From positions 372,001 to 436,000 of the IMG/VR virus record IMGVR_UViG_3300032782_000001: a stretch of 64,000 nt of DNA, one strand, 5' to 3'. Both the position numbers and the translations under genes were made by a program. This document shows, piece after piece, positions 2,217 to 19,014 of the stretch (position 1 is its first letter; every line of letters starts with the position of its first letter). The notes beneath the pieces are model-generated. The model had not been told where the DNA came from, searched no databases, and was given only the letters and a program-made list of their open reading frames with translations.

Positions 2217-2996
2217 TCATTGACGTTCCCACGTCAGTTCAGAATATGGGCAAAGTATTCGTTTGAGCCAAGCAATGCCCCAGTCTTGGAAGATTCCGAC
2301 AGCCAGCACGGTGAGTTGGAGAGCAGCAATAGATGCCAGGTGAAAATGCTTATTCTGATTGAGGAGCATGGTTCCGATGCCGCCTTCGGATCTACTAATG
2401 CCTTCCACCATCGTTAGCATCATCCATCCCATTGCCGCATTCTGTCTGAGGACTTCGAGCGAATAATCAGCACGCCCAAGTATCACGACTTCTAGAATCG
2501 CCCGCCATTCACCCATACGGAGGGTTCGAGCATGGTCGAATTCTTCTCTCGGAATACTAGCAACGACTTCCGCCATTGAAGTCATGAAGAACGTGCTCAT
2601 CCCGAAGACGAGCAGAGACACTTTAAGCCAGTGGCCAGCACCGAACATAAGGGTGAACAGCACAACAAACCCGGTCATCCCGAAGAAACGGGCTTTAGAA
2701 AATGCGGCTACGATAGGCCGCATCGCGGGAAGAACCGTCAGATACGCCATGCCGATGGAGAGAACAGAAGATATGATGAGCGCTTGAAGATTTGTCATGA
2801 AGCTCGAGTAAAGCTCGTAGACGAGACCGTCGTTGCGAAACATCTCCACCCACGCGCTCGCTACTTGAGCCGGCCTCGGGATGAGCTCAGAAGGATAGAA
2901 ACTCCATACGAGCAAAGCGAGCCCGACTTGGAATAGAACGATGAACAGAATGACCCGACTCGATACGGGTCTATTTGGGCGGAACGCGTCAATCAT
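2217..2996 (-). CDS. ABC transporter permease (NitT/TauT-like)
   Basis: Several hydrophobic segments; EAA-like loop EEFDHARTLRMG; LTMVEGISRSEGGIG resembles the SsuC/TauC-type motif; adjacent to the ATPase. Confidence 0.85.
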   Translation of the reverse strand: MIDAFRPNRPVSSRVILFIVLFQVGLALLVWSFYPSELIPRPAQVASAWVEMFRNDGLVYELYSSFMTNLQALIISSVLSIGMAYLTVLPAMRPIVAAFSKARFFGMTGFVVLFTLMFGAGHWLKVSLLVFGMSTFFMTSMAEVVASIPREEFDHARTLRMGEWRAILEVVILGRADYSLEVLRQNAAMGWMMLTMVEGISRSEGGIGTMLLNQNKHFHLASIAALQLTVLAVGIFQDWGIAWLKRILCPYSELTWERQ

Positions 2997-4795
2997 CAGT
3001 TCGACGTGCCGAGAACGATGACCACGCGACGATTCTTCGAACGACCGTCTTCGTTTGCATTGGATGCCACCGGGTCATTCTGACCATGCGGGACAACAGT
3101 GAAGCGGGAATCCGGAAAATTCGTACTGGATTGCTTCTCGAGCCACACCTTGACGGCGTTAGCACGCGCCTGGGAGAGCTTCATATTGTTACCAGGATCT
3201 CCGGTGTTGTCAGTGTGACCATGGATCTCAATAGCGAGCTCGTCGGCCACAAGAAGACCGTTCTTAAGTTGCTGGAGCTGGACCTGAGCACTGGGATCGA
3301 ATGAAGCAGAGCCCGTTTGGAAATTGATGCTCCAATTCCTCTTCGACACAACTTTGGTAACGGGACCGCCGGTGAATTTCGGCATGTCTGCCGTGGCAAC
3401 AGCTGCCGTAGTGGAGATCTTTGGCTTAATAGCCTTCACGAACGAGAGATTCAGAATATCATCCACCTTAGGATAGTTCGGAACCAGCTTCGGATATTGC
3501 TGAACGACGATATCACCAAACACAGTGTACGTCGCTGCAAAAACATTCGCAGACCCCTCTGATAGACCAAAGAGTTCCTCGAGGTCAGCGTAATTGCTGG
3601 CATAGGAACCACCAAGATTCACCTGGACACCAGTCTTGTCCGCTTCTGTAGCGCCTTTGTAATATTTCTCCCAGTATGCCGCGTCCTTCTCTTTATAGAC
3701 CTCCGCAGAAATCTTGGCTGCATGAGAAAGAGCAGCCGGGAAGGACCTGACTTGATCACCACCTTCGCAAATAGCGGCCAGCATACCGATGATTTCATCC
3801 TTGTTGGCAGCATCCCACTTGCGGATGCCAATGATGGCTGACGGCATTTGACTCCGGTATTCCCTGGTCGAGACAATAGATACGAGTCCACCTTTGTTTT
3901 GGGCAACATTCACATCGCCGGGAGTCCAAGTAACAACGGCATTGACACAAACGTGTTTCTTCTCACCTGTGAGCTTGCCGTTTTGCACGACCTTGCGATC
4001 CTCACAGGCCCCAGTAATGTACTTCTGACCTGCTTCAATGAAGTCCGTAGCGTTGACCCAATTGAGTGCGTCTGGGTCCCACGTAGTTTCATCCGGGTTA
4101 TTCTTGATACCGTTGTCACCAGCCCACTTCATGGCGATATTCCAATCACCATCACGAATAACGCCGGCCACCAAGCCGCCAACTGATACTTTCGGGTGGT
4201 CCCTCCAGTCAGCAGGTCCCATGAATTTATCTTCTCCGCGAGAGTATCCGGTAGATCCAATAATTTCGGCTTGATACTCCTTGCCGATCTTGGAAAGCTC
4301 AGCATTGACGCCAGCAAGGAATGCTGCAGTCCCATCACCCATCAAAACGAGGAAATGAACCCCCTGCGTGGGTTGAGCATTGGATTTAAGTCCATTGGCA
4401 AAAGCCATGAGGCTGGCTGTCATCTTATTCGTATCATCTTCGCGGATAATGGATAAGTTCACCTTGTGCTGATCCATCAGCGAACCTTCGGTAGTGCTGG
4501 CACCACCATTGGCGAACAACATACCCATTTGCGAGTTCCAAGCCATGACTTGCATGCGGATCTCGGGAGCTGAAGACTTTGCCACCTTGGTGCCGGGCAG
4601 TTGGACAGGTGACGATGCCACGATCGTATTCGAACTGCCGACCTGAGGAAGGTCGGCAATTTTCGGGACCTCGGATTTAGTAGACGGAGGGCCGATCAGA
4701 CCGCGGTCTGCCGCGCATTTGAACCCGGCCACGAGACCGGCAAAGATGGAAGCTGCGAGGATGACGCGTGGCAGGGTCTTGATCTTGGTGGACAT
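2996..4795 (-). CDS. ABC substrate-binding protein fused to a C-terminal OmpA-like peptidoglycan-binding domain
   Basis: N-terminal TM/signal segment; central periplasmic-binding-protein-like region; C-terminal INFQTGSASF...IEIHGHTDNTGDPGNNMKLSQARANAVK...GRSKNRRV (OmpA-C motifs). Confidence 0.85.
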   Translation of the reverse strand: MSTKIKTLPRVILAASIFAGLVAGFKCAADRGLIGPPSTKSEVPKIADLPQVGSSNTIVASSPVQLPGTKVAKSSAPEIRMQVMAWNSQMGMLFANGGASTTEGSLMDQHKVNLSIIREDDTNKMTASLMAFANGLKSNAQPTQGVHFLVLMGDGTAAFLAGVNAELSKIGKEYQAEIIGSTGYSRGEDKFMGPADWRDHPKVSVGGLVAGVIRDGDWNIAMKWAGDNGIKNNPDETTWDPDALNWVNATDFIEAGQKYITGACEDRKVVQNGKLTGEKKHVCVNAVVTWTPGDVNVAQNKGGLVSIVSTREYRSQMPSAIIGIRKWDAANKDEIIGMLAAICEGGDQVRSFPAALSHAAKISAEVYKEKDAAYWEKYYKGATEADKTGVQVNLGGSYASNYADLEELFGLSEGSANVFAATYTVFGDIVVQQYPKLVPNYPKVDDILNLSFVKAIKPKISTTAAVATADMPKFTGGPVTKVVSKRNWSINFQTGSASFDPSAQVQLQQLKNGLLVADELAIEIHGHTDNTGDPGNNMKLSQARANAVKVWLEKQSSTNFPDSRFTVVPHGQNDPVASNANEDGRSKNRRVVIVLGTSN

Positions 4796-13282: not shown

Positions 13283-13522
13283 TTACACCTCCATGATAAG
13301 GCGGACGTCAACGAGATCAGCTATTTCAGAACTGATCGGGACGCAGTCAGCCATGACACTCTTACACTTGTTGCAGACAAGCTCCCATCCGGAATGATAC
13401 TCTTTCATCCATTCCATGGATGCACCTAGTCCGCATATGCAAGTCCCGTTTACGATGATTCTGCCGTCTAAGAATCGATGAACGGAAGAATACGAACGAG
13501 GGAGTGCATTAAGCCGCGTCAT
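13283..13522 (-). CDS. Small Zn-ribbon-like protein
   Basis: ATG 13522 overlaps the recD stop; CIC...CNKC. Confidence 0.5.
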   Translation of the reverse strand: MTRLNALPRSYSSVHRFLDGRIIVNGTCICGLGASMEWMKEYHSGWELVCNKCKSVMADCVPISSEIADLVDVRLIMEV

Positions 13523-15743
13523 CACTCTTCGATTGAAGCTTTTGAAGTTCTTCAGAGATGAATGAGGAAAGCGCAGAATTCCGAACAGTTTCTCTATCAT
13601 TCGTGGTGGCAAACCTAAAAGCTCCCGGATCTCCGAAGATGAATACTTTCTTCTTCGCACGGGTAATCGCGGTGTAGATAAGATTTCGGTACAGCATTAC
13701 ACCGTACTTCATTGTCATGGGTAGAACAATATAGTCAAATTCCTGCCCTTGACACTTGTGCGCAGTACAGGCATATGCCACACGTAGAACATGACGAGCT
13801 TCTTCCACTTTAAAAGTGAAGATTTTGTCTACATATTTCGGAACGGTTGACTCAGAGTCAAACCAATCAAAAATTTTGACTTCAATTTCGTCATTCTTAA
13901 GAGAAATTCGCTGGACCTTTCCAACATCTCCATTGAAGACCATTCTATCATAATCATTCTTGATAATCATGACACGGTCTCCTTCATAGAGATCGGTCTC
14001 GCCATGACGAATCTTCGTAGTCTTGTCATATCCAGGGTTGAGGACTTCACGAAGTTCTAGATTCAGATTATTAACTCCTAAGATCCCGTCGTAGGTTGGA
14101 GCAATTACTTGGAAATTGGCATTCTTGGCCTTCATGTTGGAAGCCATGTCACAAATTTCCTCCATTACCCTGTCTTTATGATAGTGGAGGAATACAAATT
14201 CCGAATTTTGCTTGAAAGTCGTGTCCACGGGCTCACCACGAAGAATAGAATGAGCTACGGAGATAATGTCTGACTGCTTTTCTTGCCTGTAGATACGAGT
14301 TAATGACACGTGGGGGACAGATTCACAAGACATGAGATTGTTGAGAACATATCCAGGCCCAACAGATGGAAGTTGAGCTGAATCTCCAACCATGATGACA
14401 ATCGTGGAGGGAGATAAAGCAGATACTAGATGGAAGAAGGTAGCACCATCTACCATGCTCATTTCATCTACAATGACAGCATCTACGATGAACTTATTGC
14501 TGGAATCGAATTCCCATCCACCATCGCGCTTGAATCCCAACGCACGGTGAATGGTATATGCGGGTTTCCCAGTAACTTGGGAGAGTCGCTTAGCCGCGAT
14601 TCCAGTTGGAGACAATAAAGAATAGTTCAAATGAGCCTTCTCAAAAAGGTTGACGAAAGCCGAGATCAGAAGAGTTTTTCCTGTACCAGGATAACCGGAA
14701 ACTACGCAAAGACGCGAATCAGAAAGCAGCATGAAAGCCTGCCGCTGCTCTTCTGAGAGAACCAAGCCGCGACCCTTCTCGAAGGAAGAAAGGGTGTCTG
14801 CCAAATCTTTGAAAGGAAAAGGCTTCTGACTGGCAAATTCAGCCATACACTGGGCTGCAACCGATTCATGGTGCCAATTCCAAAATGGGTAAATGCGATC
14901 ATTGTCGCAAATTACGGCCTTGGACTCACGAAGTTGAGCTAAAGCCGTGTAGAATTCCGATTCAGATATATATTCACCATGAGAAAATGGCTGAAGTCCA
15001 TTGCGTCGGAACATTCGACGCGCGTGGTCAAGAATTTGGTCTGAACTTGCATACATGTGACCTTCTGATTGAGAAAGTTCGATCAGAGAATGTTGAACGA
15101 ATGCCTTAATACGCCGGGAATCATCTACCCCGATTCCAAGCTTGCGAGCAGCGATGTCGGCAGTTAAAAATCCGATTCCGGCGCAATCCGCGAGTCGATA
15201 CGGGTCTGACCGAGTAATATTCCTCGTATCAGTCCCGAATTTGGTATATACGGACTTAATTTGGGATGCAGTCAGTCCGAGTTCCGCCAAGAAAATAGCC
15301 ACAGTCCGGGTCTCGGAAGATTCTTTCCACTCCCGGATGATGGAATCAGCTTGAGGCTTCGTAAGAAAATCAAGAGATTGAATCGAATCAGCGTTAGTTT
15401 CGAGGACATGGAGAAGGTTGTCCCCATAAACTCCATAAAGTCGATTGGCTGTAACAGGACCAATCGTACGGACGTTGTTCATCAAGTAACTGACAATTCC
15501 AGCTTTCCCTTTTTCGGGAATGACTTCACATGAGGTGGCATTGAGCTGCCGACCATAAGTCGCATGCTCTTCGTATTTCCCAATAAATTTGGCCTTCAGA
15601 CCAACACTAAATGAGAAACCTGGGAAATTTCCTCGGACGGTTACTTCTGATTTCTTACCCTCCGGAATAGTCTTGAGGACATAATACCCATTCTCGCGCT
15701 TAGCGAAGAGGATACCACTGATCTTGCAGGTCAGTTCTTCCAT
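13509..15743 (-). CDS. recD: RecD2-like SF1B helicase
   Basis: N-terminal OB/HhH region (IGPVTANRL), Walker A GYPGTGKT, IVDEMSMVD, VGDSAQLPSVGPG, AYACTAHKCQGQE, LYTAITRAK. Confidence 0.93.
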   Translation of the reverse strand: MEELTCKISGILFAKRENGYYVLKTIPEGKKSEVTVRGNFPGFSFSVGLKAKFIGKYEEHATYGRQLNATSCEVIPEKGKAGIVSYLMNNVRTIGPVTANRLYGVYGDNLLHVLETNADSIQSLDFLTKPQADSIIREWKESSETRTVAIFLAELGLTASQIKSVYTKFGTDTRNITRSDPYRLADCAGIGFLTADIAARKLGIGVDDSRRIKAFVQHSLIELSQSEGHMYASSDQILDHARRMFRRNGLQPFSHGEYISESEFYTALAQLRESKAVICDNDRIYPFWNWHHESVAAQCMAEFASQKPFPFKDLADTLSSFEKGRGLVLSEEQRQAFMLLSDSRLCVVSGYPGTGKTLLISAFVNLFEKAHLNYSLLSPTGIAAKRLSQVTGKPAYTIHRALGFKRDGGWEFDSSNKFIVDAVIVDEMSMVDGATFFHLVSALSPSTIVIMVGDSAQLPSVGPGYVLNNLMSCESVPHVSLTRIYRQEKQSDIISVAHSILRGEPVDTTFKQNSEFVFLHYHKDRVMEEICDMASNMKAKNANFQVIAPTYDGILGVNNLNLELREVLNPGYDKTTKIRHGETDLYEGDRVMIIKNDYDRMVFNGDVGKVQRISLKNDEIEVKIFDWFDSESTVPKYVDKIFTFKVEEARHVLRVAYACTAHKCQGQEFDYIVLPMTMKYGVMLYRNLIYTAITRAKKKVFIFGDPGAFRFATTNDRETVRNSALSSFISEELQKLQSKSDDAA

Positions 15744-15802
15744 CTGTTACTGCCACGATCAATAGTACATCAAAAGCCCGCGAAATACAAGAAGGAAAGC
15801 TT

Positions 15803-16600
15803 TTACGAAATCCGAATCATATCATAGAATTCAGATTCGGTAATAATAGAAACCCCATATTTTTTGGCCTTCTGCATTTTGGAAGAGGTAAAGGATTGGT
15901 CCTCATTAGTAATGAGGTAAGTCAATCCAGATCCGACGGATTCTTTAACCGTCCCTCCAGCATTTAAAATATCTTTTTGTACTGCCTTACGTGGTTTAGA
16001 CGTGGCTCCCGTAATACAGAAAGATTTTCCGCTAAGAGGCCCGGAAATAGGTCGTTTCAAGTCTAGGACGGAAGCAAGGTCCAGAATTGCTTCTCTCCGT
16101 TCCTGGATTCCGGAGTATATTTGGCGAGCTGTTACTTCTCCTACGTTAGGGACTCGGAGCAAATCTTCAATCGAAGCTGAGAGGATCTTTTCTACAGTGT
16201 CCAACCCGGCCTGAACCATGTCAGTGGAAGTGGCGATACCCAAATTCTGAATATTGAGACCGGCCAACATGAGTTCAAGAGGAATAGACTTAGCCCGATG
16301 AAGAACTTCCCAACACTTCTGGGCTACTTTAACCCCAGAACAACATTCAGCCATGTCTTCAACATCCAGTCTGTACAGATCTGCAATGGAAGCGATGCGG
16401 GGATTATCCGGATCGGTCAAAGTATCAATGAAGGAATCTCCCCAGTGAAGTAAACCGAGTCGATTCACCCAAGCCTTGACCGAACCAGACAACCTGGACG
16501 GGCATCCTTTGGATCGACAATAGAGGAATTCTCCCTCTATCGTGGTTGGCCCAGCACAAGAAGGACAGGCATCAGGAATCTTGAAGAGCTCGGGCTCCAT
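15803..16600 (-). CDS. ligA: NAD-dependent DNA ligase, C-terminal part (Zn finger, HhH, BRCT)
   Basis: CPSC...YCRSKGCP Zn finger; IADLYRL; VPNVGEVTA HhH; BRCT GKSFCITG...GGTVKESV...LITNE...SSKMQKAKKYGV. Confidence 0.9.
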   Translation of the reverse strand: MEPELFKIPDACPSCAGPTTIEGEFLYCRSKGCPSRLSGSVKAWVNRLGLLHWGDSFIDTLTDPDNPRIASIADLYRLDVEDMAECCSGVKVAQKCWEVLHRAKSIPLELMLAGLNIQNLGIATSTDMVQAGLDTVEKILSASIEDLLRVPNVGEVTARQIYSGIQERREAILDLASVLDLKRPISGPLSGKSFCITGATSKPRKAVQKDILNAGGTVKESVGSGLTYLITNEDQSFTSSKMQKAKKYGVSIITESEFYDMIRIS

Positions 16601-16623
16601 GCCCGAGGTTACACGTAACAGAT

Positions 16624-17085
16624 TTAAGCCTGTTCTTGTTGCTCTTCAGCAGCCGGGGCAGGGGTCTCTTCTTCCACTTCAACGGGAACTTCGTAGACCT
16701 CTTCGGGCGCCGGGGGCGCCGGGGGTGCCCCGTGCTGCGGAGGACCGCCTTGAGGCGAACCATAGGCCATGTCGGATTCGGCCATCTGAAGCTTGCCGTC
16801 GTAGAATGCCTTAGAGAATTTCGAGAGTTCTTCGCCCAACGCCAGAACCTCTTCAGAAATCTTCTCGAGCTCTGAAAGCTCTCCACCAATGAAATCGCCC
16901 TGGAGGCGAGCCAGCTTGGCGTAAAGGACGTGAGTGTCCTTCAAGACGTCAGCAATGTAGGAGTTGACCCGTTGCCATTCAGCATCCCTATCCGTGGCTG
17001 CGGACCTAACGAGGTGCAGATTCCTGCGATCACGAAGCTCTTGGGCCACGCGATACGCCACAGTCGCAAAATTGGAAGCAGGCAT
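16624..17085 (-). CDS. Hypothetical coiled-coil protein with a Pro/Glu-rich tail, between the ligase halves
   Basis: Start moved to ATG 17085 after AGAGGA; 153 aa. Confidence 0.65.
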   Translation of the reverse strand: MPASNFATVAYRVAQELRDRRNLHLVRSAATDRDAEWQRVNSYIADVLKDTHVLYAKLARLQGDFIGGELSELEKISEEVLALGEELSKFSKAFYDGKLQMAESDMAYGSPQGGPPQHGAPPAPPAPEEVYEVPVEVEEETPAPAAEEQQEQA

Positions 17086-17153
17086 GCAGGTCCTCTTAGG
17101 AAGAGGCGCCACCAAAGGGCTATTTAGATATCGAACTAGTGTACCATAGGGGT

Positions 17154-18281
17154 ATGGACCGCAAAGAAGAATTGAAGAAACTAATCCAAGAAGCGCAAGA
17201 AGCTTACTACAATTTGGAACCCAAAGTATCGGACCAAGTTTATGACGCATGGGTTGATGAACTGACTCAGTTAGACCCCATTGCAACAGAAGTTACGGTC
17301 GTCGGGGCTCCGGTTCCACAGTTATCGGTCTGGGAGAAAGTTGCTCACGAGATCCCAATGGGGTCTCTCAATAAAGTTAATTCATTCGAAGAGTTCAAAG
17401 AGTGGGCTCAGAAAACCGGGGCGTCCACTTTGTTCATGACTCACAAAGTTGACGGGTCATCGATGGAATTAGTTTATAAGTCCGGCAAGCTTATCAGGTG
17501 CGTGACTAGAGGTGACGGCATCATCGGCGAAGATGTGACCGCCAATGTCATTCAAATCCCATCAGTGCCCAAACAATTAGAGGAACCGGTGGACGTCACT
17601 GTGCGCGGTGAAATTGTCATGTTCAAAAGCGTTTTCGAGAAAAAATATGCGGGAGTCTACGCCAACCCGCGCAATACCGCAGCAGCCAAGGTCCGCGAGA
17701 AGAAAGGAGGAGGAGAAACATGCCGAGATCTGGAATTTATAGCTTATTGGATGCAACTTGGAGACAATGCATTTCAACCGAAGACCGTGGTCTTCATGAT
17801 CGATTGGCTCGAAAGGCGGAAATTTAACATCCCAGAGTGCTCGGTCACAATCATCACCGAAATGGACCATATGTATCGACTTTATGAGTCCACTAAGAAA
17901 AATCGAGATTCAATCCCTTACGAAATCGATGGAATGGTGGTGTCTGTTAACAACCTCGATAGATTCGAAGAACTCGGGGAACTCAACATGCGTCCAAGAG
18001 GACAAATTGCGTGGAAATTTGACTCAGCGATGGGGATATCAAGGGTCATTGACATTAAATGGCAAGTTGGACTCACGGGACGAATTACTCCCGTCGCAAG
18101 CATTGAGCCTGTGAATATCGGTGGTGTAACAATTACAAGCGTCTCTCTCCATAACCTGACGTTATTCCGAGATCTTCGTCTCTCCCCCGGATCTCAAGTT
18201 CTCGTCTCCAGAAGAAATGACGTTATCCCATACATCGAAGCTAGGTTGGACGACAACAAAGCTGATGAGCTCAAGCAATGA
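17154..18281 (+). CDS. ligA: NAD-dependent DNA ligase, N-terminal part (Ia, adenylation, OB domains)
   Basis: YYNLEPKVSDQVYD, HEIPMGSLNK, KVDGSS (catalytic Lys), TRGDGIIGEDVT, VRGEI, NPRNTAA, YEIDGMVV, WQVGLTGRITPVA, RNDVIP; ends right after the OB domain. Confidence 0.93.
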   Translation: MDRKEELKKLIQEAQEAYYNLEPKVSDQVYDAWVDELTQLDPIATEVTVVGAPVPQLSVWEKVAHEIPMGSLNKVNSFEEFKEWAQKTGASTLFMTHKVDGSSMELVYKSGKLIRCVTRGDGIIGEDVTANVIQIPSVPKQLEEPVDVTVRGEIVMFKSVFEKKYAGVYANPRNTAAAKVREKKGGGETCRDLEFIAYWMQLGDNAFQPKTVVFMIDWLERRKFNIPECSVTIITEMDHMYRLYESTKKNRDSIPYEIDGMVVSVNNLDRFEELGELNMRPRGQIAWKFDSAMGISRVIDIKWQVGLTGRITPVASIEPVNIGGVTITSVSLHNLTLFRDLRLSPGSQVLVSRRNDVIPYIEARLDDNKADELKQ

Positions 18282-18499
18282 CACGACCTCGACATGAAGC
18301 AGCTAAGACTCGACTCAATCTGCAGATTCCAGACGGCTTCCGGGAAACACTAGAAAATGTTCGAAAGAAAACCGACGCGGCCTCCATAACAGAGGTAATC
18401 ATTAAAGCAGTTCGGGTATATGAAGCAATAAGTAAGTCCAACGCCAGGTTGATACTGAGGTATCCTGACGGAATGGAAAAAGAAGTTTGGGTGATCTAA
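18278..18499 (+). CDS. Ribbon-helix-helix-like DNA-binding protein
   Basis: RLNLQIPD...LENVRKKTDAASITEVIIKAV pattern; ATGA overlap with the ligase-N stop. Confidence 0.6.
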   Translation: MTRPRHEAAKTRLNLQIPDGFRETLENVRKKTDAASITEVIIKAVRVYEAISKSNARLILRYPDGMEKEVWVI

Positions 18500-19014
18500 A
18501 GTTCGTAAATACCAATATACGGTAAATTTCGATATCTCTCATCGAAATCCAATCCATACCCAACAACAAAATGATCTTCAATAGTGAATCCGAGATAATC
18601 GATCGGAACCTCAACCTTCTTACGAGAAGGTTTGTGTAAGAGTGCGCAAACTGCAATGCTGGACGGATTCCTTGCTTGAAGCACTGATAAAAGATAATGA
18701 ATCGTAAGTCCAGTATCGATAATATCTTCTACCAACAAAATGTGCCTGCCTTCTATCGGTTTCACCAAATCGGCAGTGATCCGGACTTCTCCGGAAGATG
18801 AGAGAGAATTTCCGTATGAACTGGCTGCTAGAAAATCGATGGTCATGCTGGGAGAATCGATGGCTCGGACCAAATCAGCCAGAAAGATGAAAGAACCTTT
18901 CAAGACACCAATTACAGTCAAAAGTTGGCCGTCATAACGTTTCCGGATTTCTTCCCCAAGAGTGGAGACTCGGAGAGAAATATCGCTAGCAGAGAGAAGT
19001 TCCTGCATAGTCAA
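18496..19014 (-). CDS. hpt: Hypoxanthine-guanine phosphoribosyltransferase
   Basis: IGVLKGSFIFLADL, SSYG, LLVEDIIDTGLT (PRPP loop), FVVGYGLD...YRNLPYI. Confidence 0.95.
   Translation of the reverse strand: MTMQELLSASDISLRVSTLGEEIRKRYDGQLLTVIGVLKGSFIFLADLVRAIDSPSMTIDFLAASSYGNSLSSSGEVRITADLVKPIEGRHILLVEDIIDTGLTIHYLLSVLQARNPSSIAVCALLHKPSRKKVEVPIDYLGFTIEDHFVVGYGLDFDERYRNLPYIGIYEL

What the first reader, a model, noticed from the sequence alone, without database searches (positions are those of the whole stretch)
15803..18281. NAD-ligase split into two divergent genes that one inversion at in-frame GAGCTC sites would rejoin
Seen: the N half (17154-18281, +) ends after the OB domain as ...NDVIPYIEARLDDNKAD-EL-KQ*. 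The C half (16600-15803, -) starts MEP-EL-FKIPDACPSC. Both EL pairs are the palindrome GAGCTC (18267-18272 and 16586-16591) in the same codon phase. Inverting 16586-18272 gives ...DNKADELFKIPDACPSC..., a continuous LigA with a 20-aa OB-to-Zn linker, close to the about 22 aa recalled for E. coli LigA. The other junction would read MEPELKQ*, still overlapping the start of the RHH gene at 18278. Each half now has its own YGTA promoter motif and neither is decayed. Inference: either a fixed inversion that left a working two-chain ligase, or a reversible switch.
Basis: partly seen in the sequence, partly recalled or inferred. Interest (0 to 1): 0.85.

Follow-up and report, generated by a model that had tools for sequence, protein, structure and literature searches.

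The report
Phage DNA ligase split by inversion

Summary
The N half (17154-18281, +) holds the Ia, adenylation and OB domains. The C half (15803-16600, -) holds the Zn finger, HhH and BRCT domains. A conserved 153-aa gene lies between them, and GAGCTC sits in frame at 16586 and 18267.

The window comes from a 436-kb IMG/VR phage contig. Twenty-seven related loci show the same layout, split at the same OB|Zn linker. Four related loci, and all five outgroup loci that pair ligA with RecD2, carry a fused ligA.

The GAGCTC pair is not supported as the crossover site. No relative has it, no inverted repeat exceeds chance at any junction, and 5% of cross-locus tail/head pairs share an in-frame dicodon. 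An independent assembly at 41x depth shows only the split form.

Two-subunit NAD+ ligases split at this same linker are already known in T5-like phages (PDB 9HU3/9I5I). This case is therefore an independent variant made by inversion.

One result is unexplained. Fused and split loci are interleaved on the N-half, C-half and RecD2 trees (AU tests on N-half and RecD2, p<0.001), which suggests that the same inversion recurred.

The parts
17154..18281 (+). ligA N half (subunit A-like): domain Ia, nucleotidyltransferase with KxDG (THKVDG), OB fold; ends 13 aa after the conserved IPYIE
   Evidence: Pfam; alignment to E. coli LigA 4glx/2owo residues 10-388; phrog_3869 positions 8-384
15803..16600 (-). 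ligA C half (subunit B-like): Cys4 Zn finger, HhH, BRCT; starts 9 residues before the first Cys
   Evidence: Pfam; alignment to T. filiformis LigA 1dgs 401-658 and to 9hu3 chain B; phrog_3869 positions 387-653
16624..17085 (-). middle gene (153 aa): two-helix hairpin core plus disordered acidic tail; always lies inside the inverted segment; function unknown
   Evidence: Ortholog next to ligA in all 31 related loci, split or fused; alignment A2; model pLDDT 77 with helices 4-62 and 67-95; no Pfam, PHROG or fold match
17086..17153 (.). divergent control region between the middle gene and the N half: CAAAGGGCTA (17113-17122) and TGTA (17140-17143), 10 nt before the ATG; the middle gene has a GAGG-type ribosome site instead
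   Evidence: Motif conserved upstream of ligA/N half in 18 of 20 loci
16601..16623 (-). 23-nt leader of the C half with TGTA at 16610-16613 (- strand), 9 nt before the ATG
   Evidence: YGTA at this distance in 16 of 16 split loci
16586..16591 (.). GAGCTC in codons 4-5 (E-L) of the C half
   Evidence: also present in L002/L003 (QEL), absent from the other relatives
18267..18272 (.). GAGCTC in the N-half tail (E-L), 3 codons before the stop
   Evidence: absent from the N tails of all 10 relatives examined
13509..15743 (-). RecD2-type helicase, the conserved downstream neighbour of ligA (fused) or of the C half (split)
   Evidence: Pfam; synteny
18278..18499 (+). 73-aa gene whose ATG overlaps the N-half stop (ATGA); variable flank, not conserved in relatives
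   Evidence: no Pfam family

Best explanation
This is an NAD+-dependent DNA ligase encoded as two polypeptides. An ancestral single ligA, which lay upstream of recD2 and divergent from a small acidic-tailed gene, was cut in the flexible OB-to-Zn-finger linker by an inversion of about 1.7 kb. The inversion carried the small gene plus the N half. The N half (Ia, adenylation, OB) kept the original promoter. The C half (Zn, HhH, BRCT) acquired its own start codon and a YGTA start-proximal signal just after the small gene's stop.

The arrangement is old and fixed in this phage. It is inferred, not shown, that the two proteins assemble on nicked DNA into a working ligase, as the two subunits of T5-like phage ligases do. 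The in-frame GAGCTC sites at the two junctions are a coincidence of this genome and not a recombination site.
For: Domains are complementary with no loss. KxDG, the Ia residues and the Cys4 Zn finger are present.

The window is part of the 436-kb contig IMGVR_UViG_3300032782_000001. Twenty-seven related split loci at 43-76% identity have the identical layout and split point. 117 of 122 protein clusters in the clade end after OB.

Fused relatives differ by exactly one inversion, and their divergent upstream neighbour is the ortholog of the middle gene at 69% and 58% identity. Outgroup loci have fused ligA followed by recD2.

Both halves evolve like recD2: dN/dS is 0.03-0.07 where dS can be computed for the C half, the middle gene and recD2; dS was saturated for every comparable N-half pair, whose amino-acid identities match recD2's. 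YGTA lies 9-10 nt before the ATG of 16 of 16 C halves and 18 of 20 N halves.

Precedent: PDB 9HU3/9I5I hold a 339-aa chain 'DNA ligase (NAD+)' and a 248-aa chain 'DNA ligase subunit B', split at the same linker and homologous to Demerecviridae subunits A and B.

Assembly: one 73-kb Logan contig at depth 41 matches 15500-19000 with 0 differences and no joints. A second sample bridges 18209-18387.
Against: There are no added dimerisation tails: the N tail is 1-13 aa and the C head is 2-8 aa.

Only contigs were available, not raw reads, so a rare fused form in the population is not excluded.

Fused loci are interleaved with split loci on the trees. The arrangement has therefore not been fixed across the whole clade.
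Confidence: 0.78

Rival explanations
1. The 1.7-kb segment is a reversible switch. It flips at the GAGCTC pair (or at other sites) within the phage population and toggles between a one-chain and a two-chain ligase.
For: Inverting at the GAGCTC sites would restore a frame with a linker one residue longer than that of natural fused P0056. Fused and split states are interleaved on the N, C and RecD2 trees, and AU tests on N and RecD2 reject a single clade for either state. Six of 16 loci share a dipeptide between the N tail and the C head, against 13% across loci (p=0.014, post hoc).
Against: No relative has the GAGCTC pair. Inverted repeats at the junctions are at chance level in 15 split and 4 fused loci. 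DNA-level in-frame matches are not enriched. Only one orientation is assembled, in two samples. The closest fused/split pair is 72% identical with saturated dS. Many 90% clusters seen on 6-12 contigs are always in one state.
Confidence: 0.05
2. The two halves no longer work together. The N half acts alone (self-adenylation or another nucleotidyl transfer), and the C half acts as a separate DNA-binding or BRCT scaffold protein.
For: There are no added interaction modules. The halves have separate expression signals. In some loci extra genes separate the parts (L105, L114, L109/L111).
Against: The halves are always retained together and adjacent in 27 split loci and evolve at similar rates. Fused relatives nested among them imply the same function. 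The T5-type enzyme is deposited as a two-chain entry.
Confidence: 0.1
3. The split is an assembly error or a decaying pseudogene, and the real gene is fused.
For: None found beyond the a priori possibility.
Against: An independent Logan assembly gives the same sequence at depth 41 with no joints. The same layout occurs in 27 other contigs from different samples. Both ORFs are intact and conserved.
Confidence: 0.01

Closest known systems
Two-subunit NAD+-dependent DNA ligase of T5-like phages (Demerecviridae; 'NAD-dependent DNA ligase subunit A/B'; PDB 9HU3, 9I5I; PHROGs 3359 and 3498)
   Same: Split at the same OB|Zn-finger linker. Subunit A ends a few residues after the OB fold, and subunit B starts a few residues before the first Cys. 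The domain content is the same.
   Different: Identity is only about 25% (L015), weaker than to bacterial LigA, so the origin is independent. The T5-type genes lie on the same strand with small ORFs between them (Vibrio phage Ceto gp62/gp59). Here the halves are on opposite strands because of an inversion, with a conserved unrelated gene between them. That the PDB entries come from a T5-like phage is inferred from homology to Ceto, not read from the entries.
Canonical single-chain bacterial and phage LigA (E. coli 2OWO/4GLX; phiKZ-like phage LigA)
   Same: All domains and catalytic motifs are the same, at about 35% identity. The nearest fused relatives are 56-61% identical, with the same neighbours.
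   Different: Here the chain is broken in the OB-Zn linker and encoded by two genes.
Phage genes split by insertion of a homing-endonuclease gene (seen here for ligA in L027)
   Same: The same linker is the break point in L027, where a 271-aa LAGLIDADG-like ORF lies between the same-strand halves.
   Different: The window has no endonuclease gene between the halves, and the halves are on opposite strands.
Site-specific invertible segments (Hin/Gin/Cin, fim switch, shufflons)
   Same: An inversion changes which coding sequences are joined.
   Different: There are no inverted repeats at the ends, and no mixed orientations in the assemblies. The state is stable within species-level clusters.

Membership tests
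NAD+-dependent DNA ligase (LigA) | Adenylation domain with the KxDG lysine, plus an OB fold | tested here: met
   PF01653 5e-51 and PF03120 1e-22. THKVDG aligns with E. coli ELKLDG.
NAD+-dependent DNA ligase (LigA) | N-terminal Ia domain that binds NMN (the mark of NAD+ use) | tested here: met
   Residues 6-60 align with E. coli 10-70; the Y, D, Y and D positions are kept and H23 is replaced by Y. PF22745 Nlig-Ia is listed for this protein.
NAD+-dependent DNA ligase (LigA) | Cys4 Zn finger, HhH and BRCT C-terminal modules | tested here: met
   They are present, but on the separate C-half protein.
NAD+-dependent DNA ligase (LigA) | NAD+-dependent nick sealing | not testable with these tools
   Needs an enzyme assay.
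Two-subunit NAD+ ligase (T5 type) | Two separate genes broken between the OB fold and the Zn finger, both conserved | tested here: met
   conservation.
Two-subunit NAD+ ligase (T5 type) | Common descent with T5 subunits A and B | tested here: not met
   The N half is closer to bacterial LigA (5e-49) than to 9hu3_A (1e-23). The nearest relatives include fused genes at 56-61% identity.
Two-subunit NAD+ ligase (T5 type) | Physical heterodimer | not testable with these tools
   No multimer prediction or assay was available.
Invertible DNA switch | Inverted repeats at the segment ends | tested here: not met
   scores are at the level of random window pairs (median P 0.69).
Invertible DNA switch | Both orientations present in one population | tested here: inconclusive
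   Only the split form appears in contigs of two runs. Contigs drop rare variants, and raw reads were not available.
Invertible DNA switch | Dedicated recombinase nearby | not tested
   The genes examined next to the segment are RecD2, a phosphoribosyltransferase and small unknown genes. The rest of the window was not scanned for recombinases.

The most novel reading that the evidence does not exclude
The same inversion of [middle gene + ligase N half] has gone back and forth several times during the diversification of this huge-phage clade. One-chain and two-chain LigA would then be interchangeable states, reached through a mechanism that leaves no inverted repeat. The mechanism could be microhomology-based, or a low-frequency programmed flip not visible in assemblies.
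Probability: 0.45. Interest if true: 0.65.

Novelty: new variant of a known kind. Interest (0 to 1): 0.5.

Why it matters
The result shows that the OB-to-Zn linker of LigA is a natural break point reached by at least three routes: an inversion here, a homing-endonuclease insertion in L027, and the T5-type split. That gives natural two-chain ligases to compare with their own fused sisters (56-72% identical), which is useful for understanding how LigA closes around DNA.

If the interleaving of fused and split forms reflects repeated inversions, it would be an unusual case of a gene's architecture toggling at one site with no recognisable recombination signal.

The conserved YGTA motif 9-10 nt before start codons also hints at an uncharacterised, probably near-leaderless expression signal in these uncultivated huge phages.

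Tried and rejected
1. GAGCTC as the crossover site is rejected. The site frequency is ordinary. The pair is absent from relatives. An in-frame shared dicodon occurs in 1 of 16 loci against a 5.4% null. The mean in-frame identical run is 4.1 against 3.8.

2. Longer inverted repeats at the junctions were not found, by exact matching or by local alignment, in split loci or fused loci. The repeat finder gives nothing at the junctions.

3. Misassembly is rejected.

4. Sigma-70 promoters and intrinsic terminators in 15600-18700 are at or below the level of shuffled sequence.

5. No function was found for the middle gene: no Pfam or PHROG family, ESM Atlas returns only unnamed viral clusters, and Foldseek against PDB gives no match with E<=0.001.

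6. Close relatives among deposited phage genomes: none by DNA, and protein hits are all about 35% identical or less.

7. Literature on split or two-subunit LigA: six searches found no paper that describes it. The precedent therefore rests on PDB chain names and GenBank annotations.

8. A single origin of the fused or the split state is rejected by AU tests. Replacement of the module by flanking recombination is unlikely, because the N half, which lies inside the inverted segment, also shows the interleaving.

Full report
OBSERVATION

The N half runs to the stop at 18279-18281. The ORF listing starts it at a GTG at 17139, but the ATG at 17154 is the start shared with relatives, and a conserved motif precedes it. 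The C half is 15803-16600 on the minus strand.

Pfam places the adenylation domain (5e-51) and the OB fold (1e-22) on the N half, and HhH plus BRCT (4e-14) on the C half. The Cys4 Zn finger is visible at the start of the C half and aligns with residues 401 onward of solved LigA structures. The N half aligns with E. coli LigA residues 10-388, including KxDG and domain Ia. The full-length ligase profile phrog_3869 (656 positions) is matched 8-384 by the N half and 387-653 by the C half, so nothing is missing.

GAGCTC is present in frame at 16586-16591 and 18267-18272.

WHERE IT COMES FROM, AND THE RELATIVES

The window is part of the 436,316-bp IMG/VR contig IMGVR_UViG_3300032782_000001. Deposited phage genomes hold nothing close: there is no DNA match, and proteins are about 35% identical.

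The protein database holds a large clade of N halves of 358-412 aa at 55-68% identity, many on contigs of 200-400 kb. A few fused proteins of 630-657 aa sit among them. In 10 IMG/VR loci the order is always RecD2(-), C half(-), middle gene(-), N half(+), with the break at the same place: after ...NDVIPYIE.NLD and before F.IPD.CP.C. Seventeen further split loci show the same layout. Some of these have extra genes inserted between the parts.

THE INVERSION IS REAL HISTORY

The fused relatives are P0056 (L012, L013), P0049 (L014), P0108 (L096) and P0122 (L099, L100). All have middle gene(-) | ligA(+) RecD2(+), with the clamp-loader delta' and ribonucleotide reductase genes upstream. The divergent neighbour of fused ligA is the ortholog of the window's middle gene, at 69% and 58% identity.

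Every flanking gene of L012 is collinear with the window, and only [middle gene + N half] is turned round. The two tblastn pieces of fused P0056 abut at residues 367/368, which map to window 18266 and 16588.

More distant loci (L050, L052, L058, L071, L072) have fused ligA followed by recD2, so the fused form is ancestral to the wider group.

THE GAGCTC PAIR IS A COINCIDENCE

- The site occurs 24 times in the window, against 20 expected.
- None of 10 relatives has it in the N tail. Only L002/L003 have it in the C head.
- The best inverted match between junction windows is at the level of random window pairs in every split locus, by exact matching and by local alignment (median P 0.69). The same holds in the four fused loci.
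- An in-frame shared dicodon between the last 12 codons of the N half and the first 12 of the C half occurs in 1 of 16 loci. The rate in cross-locus pairs is 5.4%.

ASSEMBLY AND POPULATION

One Logan contig of 73 kb, at depth 41, from the probable source sample covers 15500-19000 with no difference and no joint. A second wetland sample holds a near-identical strain at about 3x, with a contig that bridges 18209-18387. Only contigs were available, so rare inverted molecules cannot be excluded.

Across the database, no fused protein is more than 72% identical to a split one. Clusters seen on 6-12 contigs are always in one state. Synonymous sites are saturated even between sister loci. This argues against a switch that flips at appreciable frequency.

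FUNCTION

Both halves are conserved about as well as recD2. Where dS can be computed away from the high-GC pairs, dN/dS is 0.03-0.07 for the C half, the middle gene and recD2; dS was saturated for every N-half pair in that group, so the N half rests on amino-acid identities similar to recD2's. In the high-GC pairs it is 0.27-0.39 for the ligase halves against 0.43-0.52 for recD2.

Each half has its own conserved signal. YGTA lies 9-10 nt before the ATG in 16 of 16 C halves and in 18 of 20 N halves or fused genes. CAAAGGGCTA lies about 12 nt further upstream of the N half. The middle gene instead has a GAGG-type ribosome site.

A working two-chain enzyme is inferred from this conservation and from precedent. 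PDB 9HU3 and 9I5I contain a 339-aa chain 'DNA ligase (NAD+)' and a 248-aa chain 'DNA ligase subunit B'. These are close homologs of gp62 and gp59 of the T5-like Vibrio phage Ceto, at 1e-101 and 2e-57, which GenBank annotates as subunits A and B. PHROGs also has separate families for the two halves.

The T5-type break is at the same linker, but the genes lie on one strand, and the proteins are only about 25% identical to the window's (L015). The origin is therefore independent.

A third route to the same break appears in L027. There a LAGLIDADG-like ORF lies between same-strand halves.

In the 50%-identity library, about a quarter of the best 150 LigA relatives are N halves that end after the OB fold. 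A tree of 267 sequences needs 32 changes of state.

THE UNEXPLAINED PART

Within the window's clade the fused genes do not form a group.

- On a careful tree of 88 N-half regions, the five fused proteins need five changes, four of them forced by well-supported branches. For example, P0108 pairs with split P0097 at 100/97, and P0049 pairs with P0028+P0043 at 97/86.
- The neighbouring recD2 gives the same picture. L014 (fused) is sister to L006 (split) at 100/100 in the first tree and 100/99 in the larger one.
- AU tests on the N half and on recD2 reject both 'all fused in one clade' and 'all split in one clade' (p = 0.0001-0.0007).
- If re-fusion is forbidden, 7 to 18 independent identical inversions are needed. 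If it is allowed, one split and about four re-fusions suffice.
- The linkers of the fused genes differ in length (5-16 aa) and in sequence, as expected for separate re-joinings.

I found no sequence feature that would direct such recurrence. One weak, post hoc hint exists: 6 of 16 split loci share a dipeptide between the N tail and the C head, against 13% in cross-locus pairs (p = 0.014). There is no matching enrichment at the DNA level.

THE MIDDLE GENE

It has a 70-aa conserved core that is predicted as a two-helix hairpin, followed by a disordered acidic tail. No family or fold match was found. Its function, and any role in the ligase or in the inversion, are unknown.

VERDICT

The inversion is supported as an ancient event that produced a fixed two-gene ligase, probably a two-subunit enzyme. 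The GAGCTC crossover and a population-level switch are not supported.

Two-subunit LigA is already known in T5-like phages. This is therefore a new variant of a known kind, made by inversion and widespread in a clade of huge phages. The possible repeated toggling between one-chain and two-chain forms is the one interesting open question.

Noticed in passing
window 17113-17143 and 16610-16613 (-); the same positions in L002-L024, L075, L096-L099: YGTA lies 9-10 nt before the ATG of ligase halves (16/16 C halves, 18/20 N halves) and of about half of the recD2 genes. CAAAGGGCTA lies about 12 nt further upstream of the N half. The middle gene has a GAGG-type ribosome site instead. In the window, 40% of YGTA-N8-10-ATG/GTG sites open ORFs of 60 aa or more, against 26% of all starts. 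This looks like a phage-specific promoter that would give near-leaderless mRNAs.
   Followed up: partly
L027:1739-4528: A more distant ligA is split at the same OB|Zn linker, but its halves are on one strand with a 271-aa LAGLIDADG-like ORF (2928-3740) between them.
   Followed up: partly
L099:2836-6855; L005, L010, L104, L108 RNR; L006 and L009 RecD2: The ribonucleotide reductase of several relatives is 1300-1340 aa, with intein and LAGLIDADG domains. RecD2 of L006 (1514 aa) and L009 (1105 aa) carries large in-frame insertions. The window's own copies are uninterrupted.
   Followed up: no
window 18278-18281; L097:9113-9116; L075:7095-7098: The N-half stop overlaps the ATG of the next gene (ATGA) in three split loci, although the downstream genes are unrelated to each other.
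   Followed up: partly
L105, L114 (between the middle gene and the N half); L109/L111 (between the C half and the middle gene): Extra DNA of about 0.8-2 kb is inserted between parts of the split locus in some relatives, so the parts need not be adjacent.
   Followed up: no
window 16627-16720 and the C-terminal tails of all middle-gene orthologs (alignment A2): The middle protein ends in a long, poorly conserved Glu/Pro/Gly-rich acidic tail of the kind found on phage single-strand-binding or DNA-mimic proteins.
   Followed up: partly
window 17517-17550: Short GC-rich contigs from both runs match only this 34-nt stretch of the adenylation domain and then diverge. These are ligA genes of other organisms in the sample, not alternative junctions.
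   Followed up: yes
last 7 aa of N halves and first 8 aa of C halves in 16 split loci: Six loci share a dipeptide between the N tail and the C head of the same genome (EL, DQ, EV, LE, EA, EA), against 13% in cross-locus pairs (p = 0.014, post hoc). It is not matched at the DNA level.
   Followed up: partly
window 18496-19014 (-): A phosphoribosyltransferase gene of HPRT type lies in the variable flank next to the N half. It is shared with L005 but not with most relatives.
   Followed up: no
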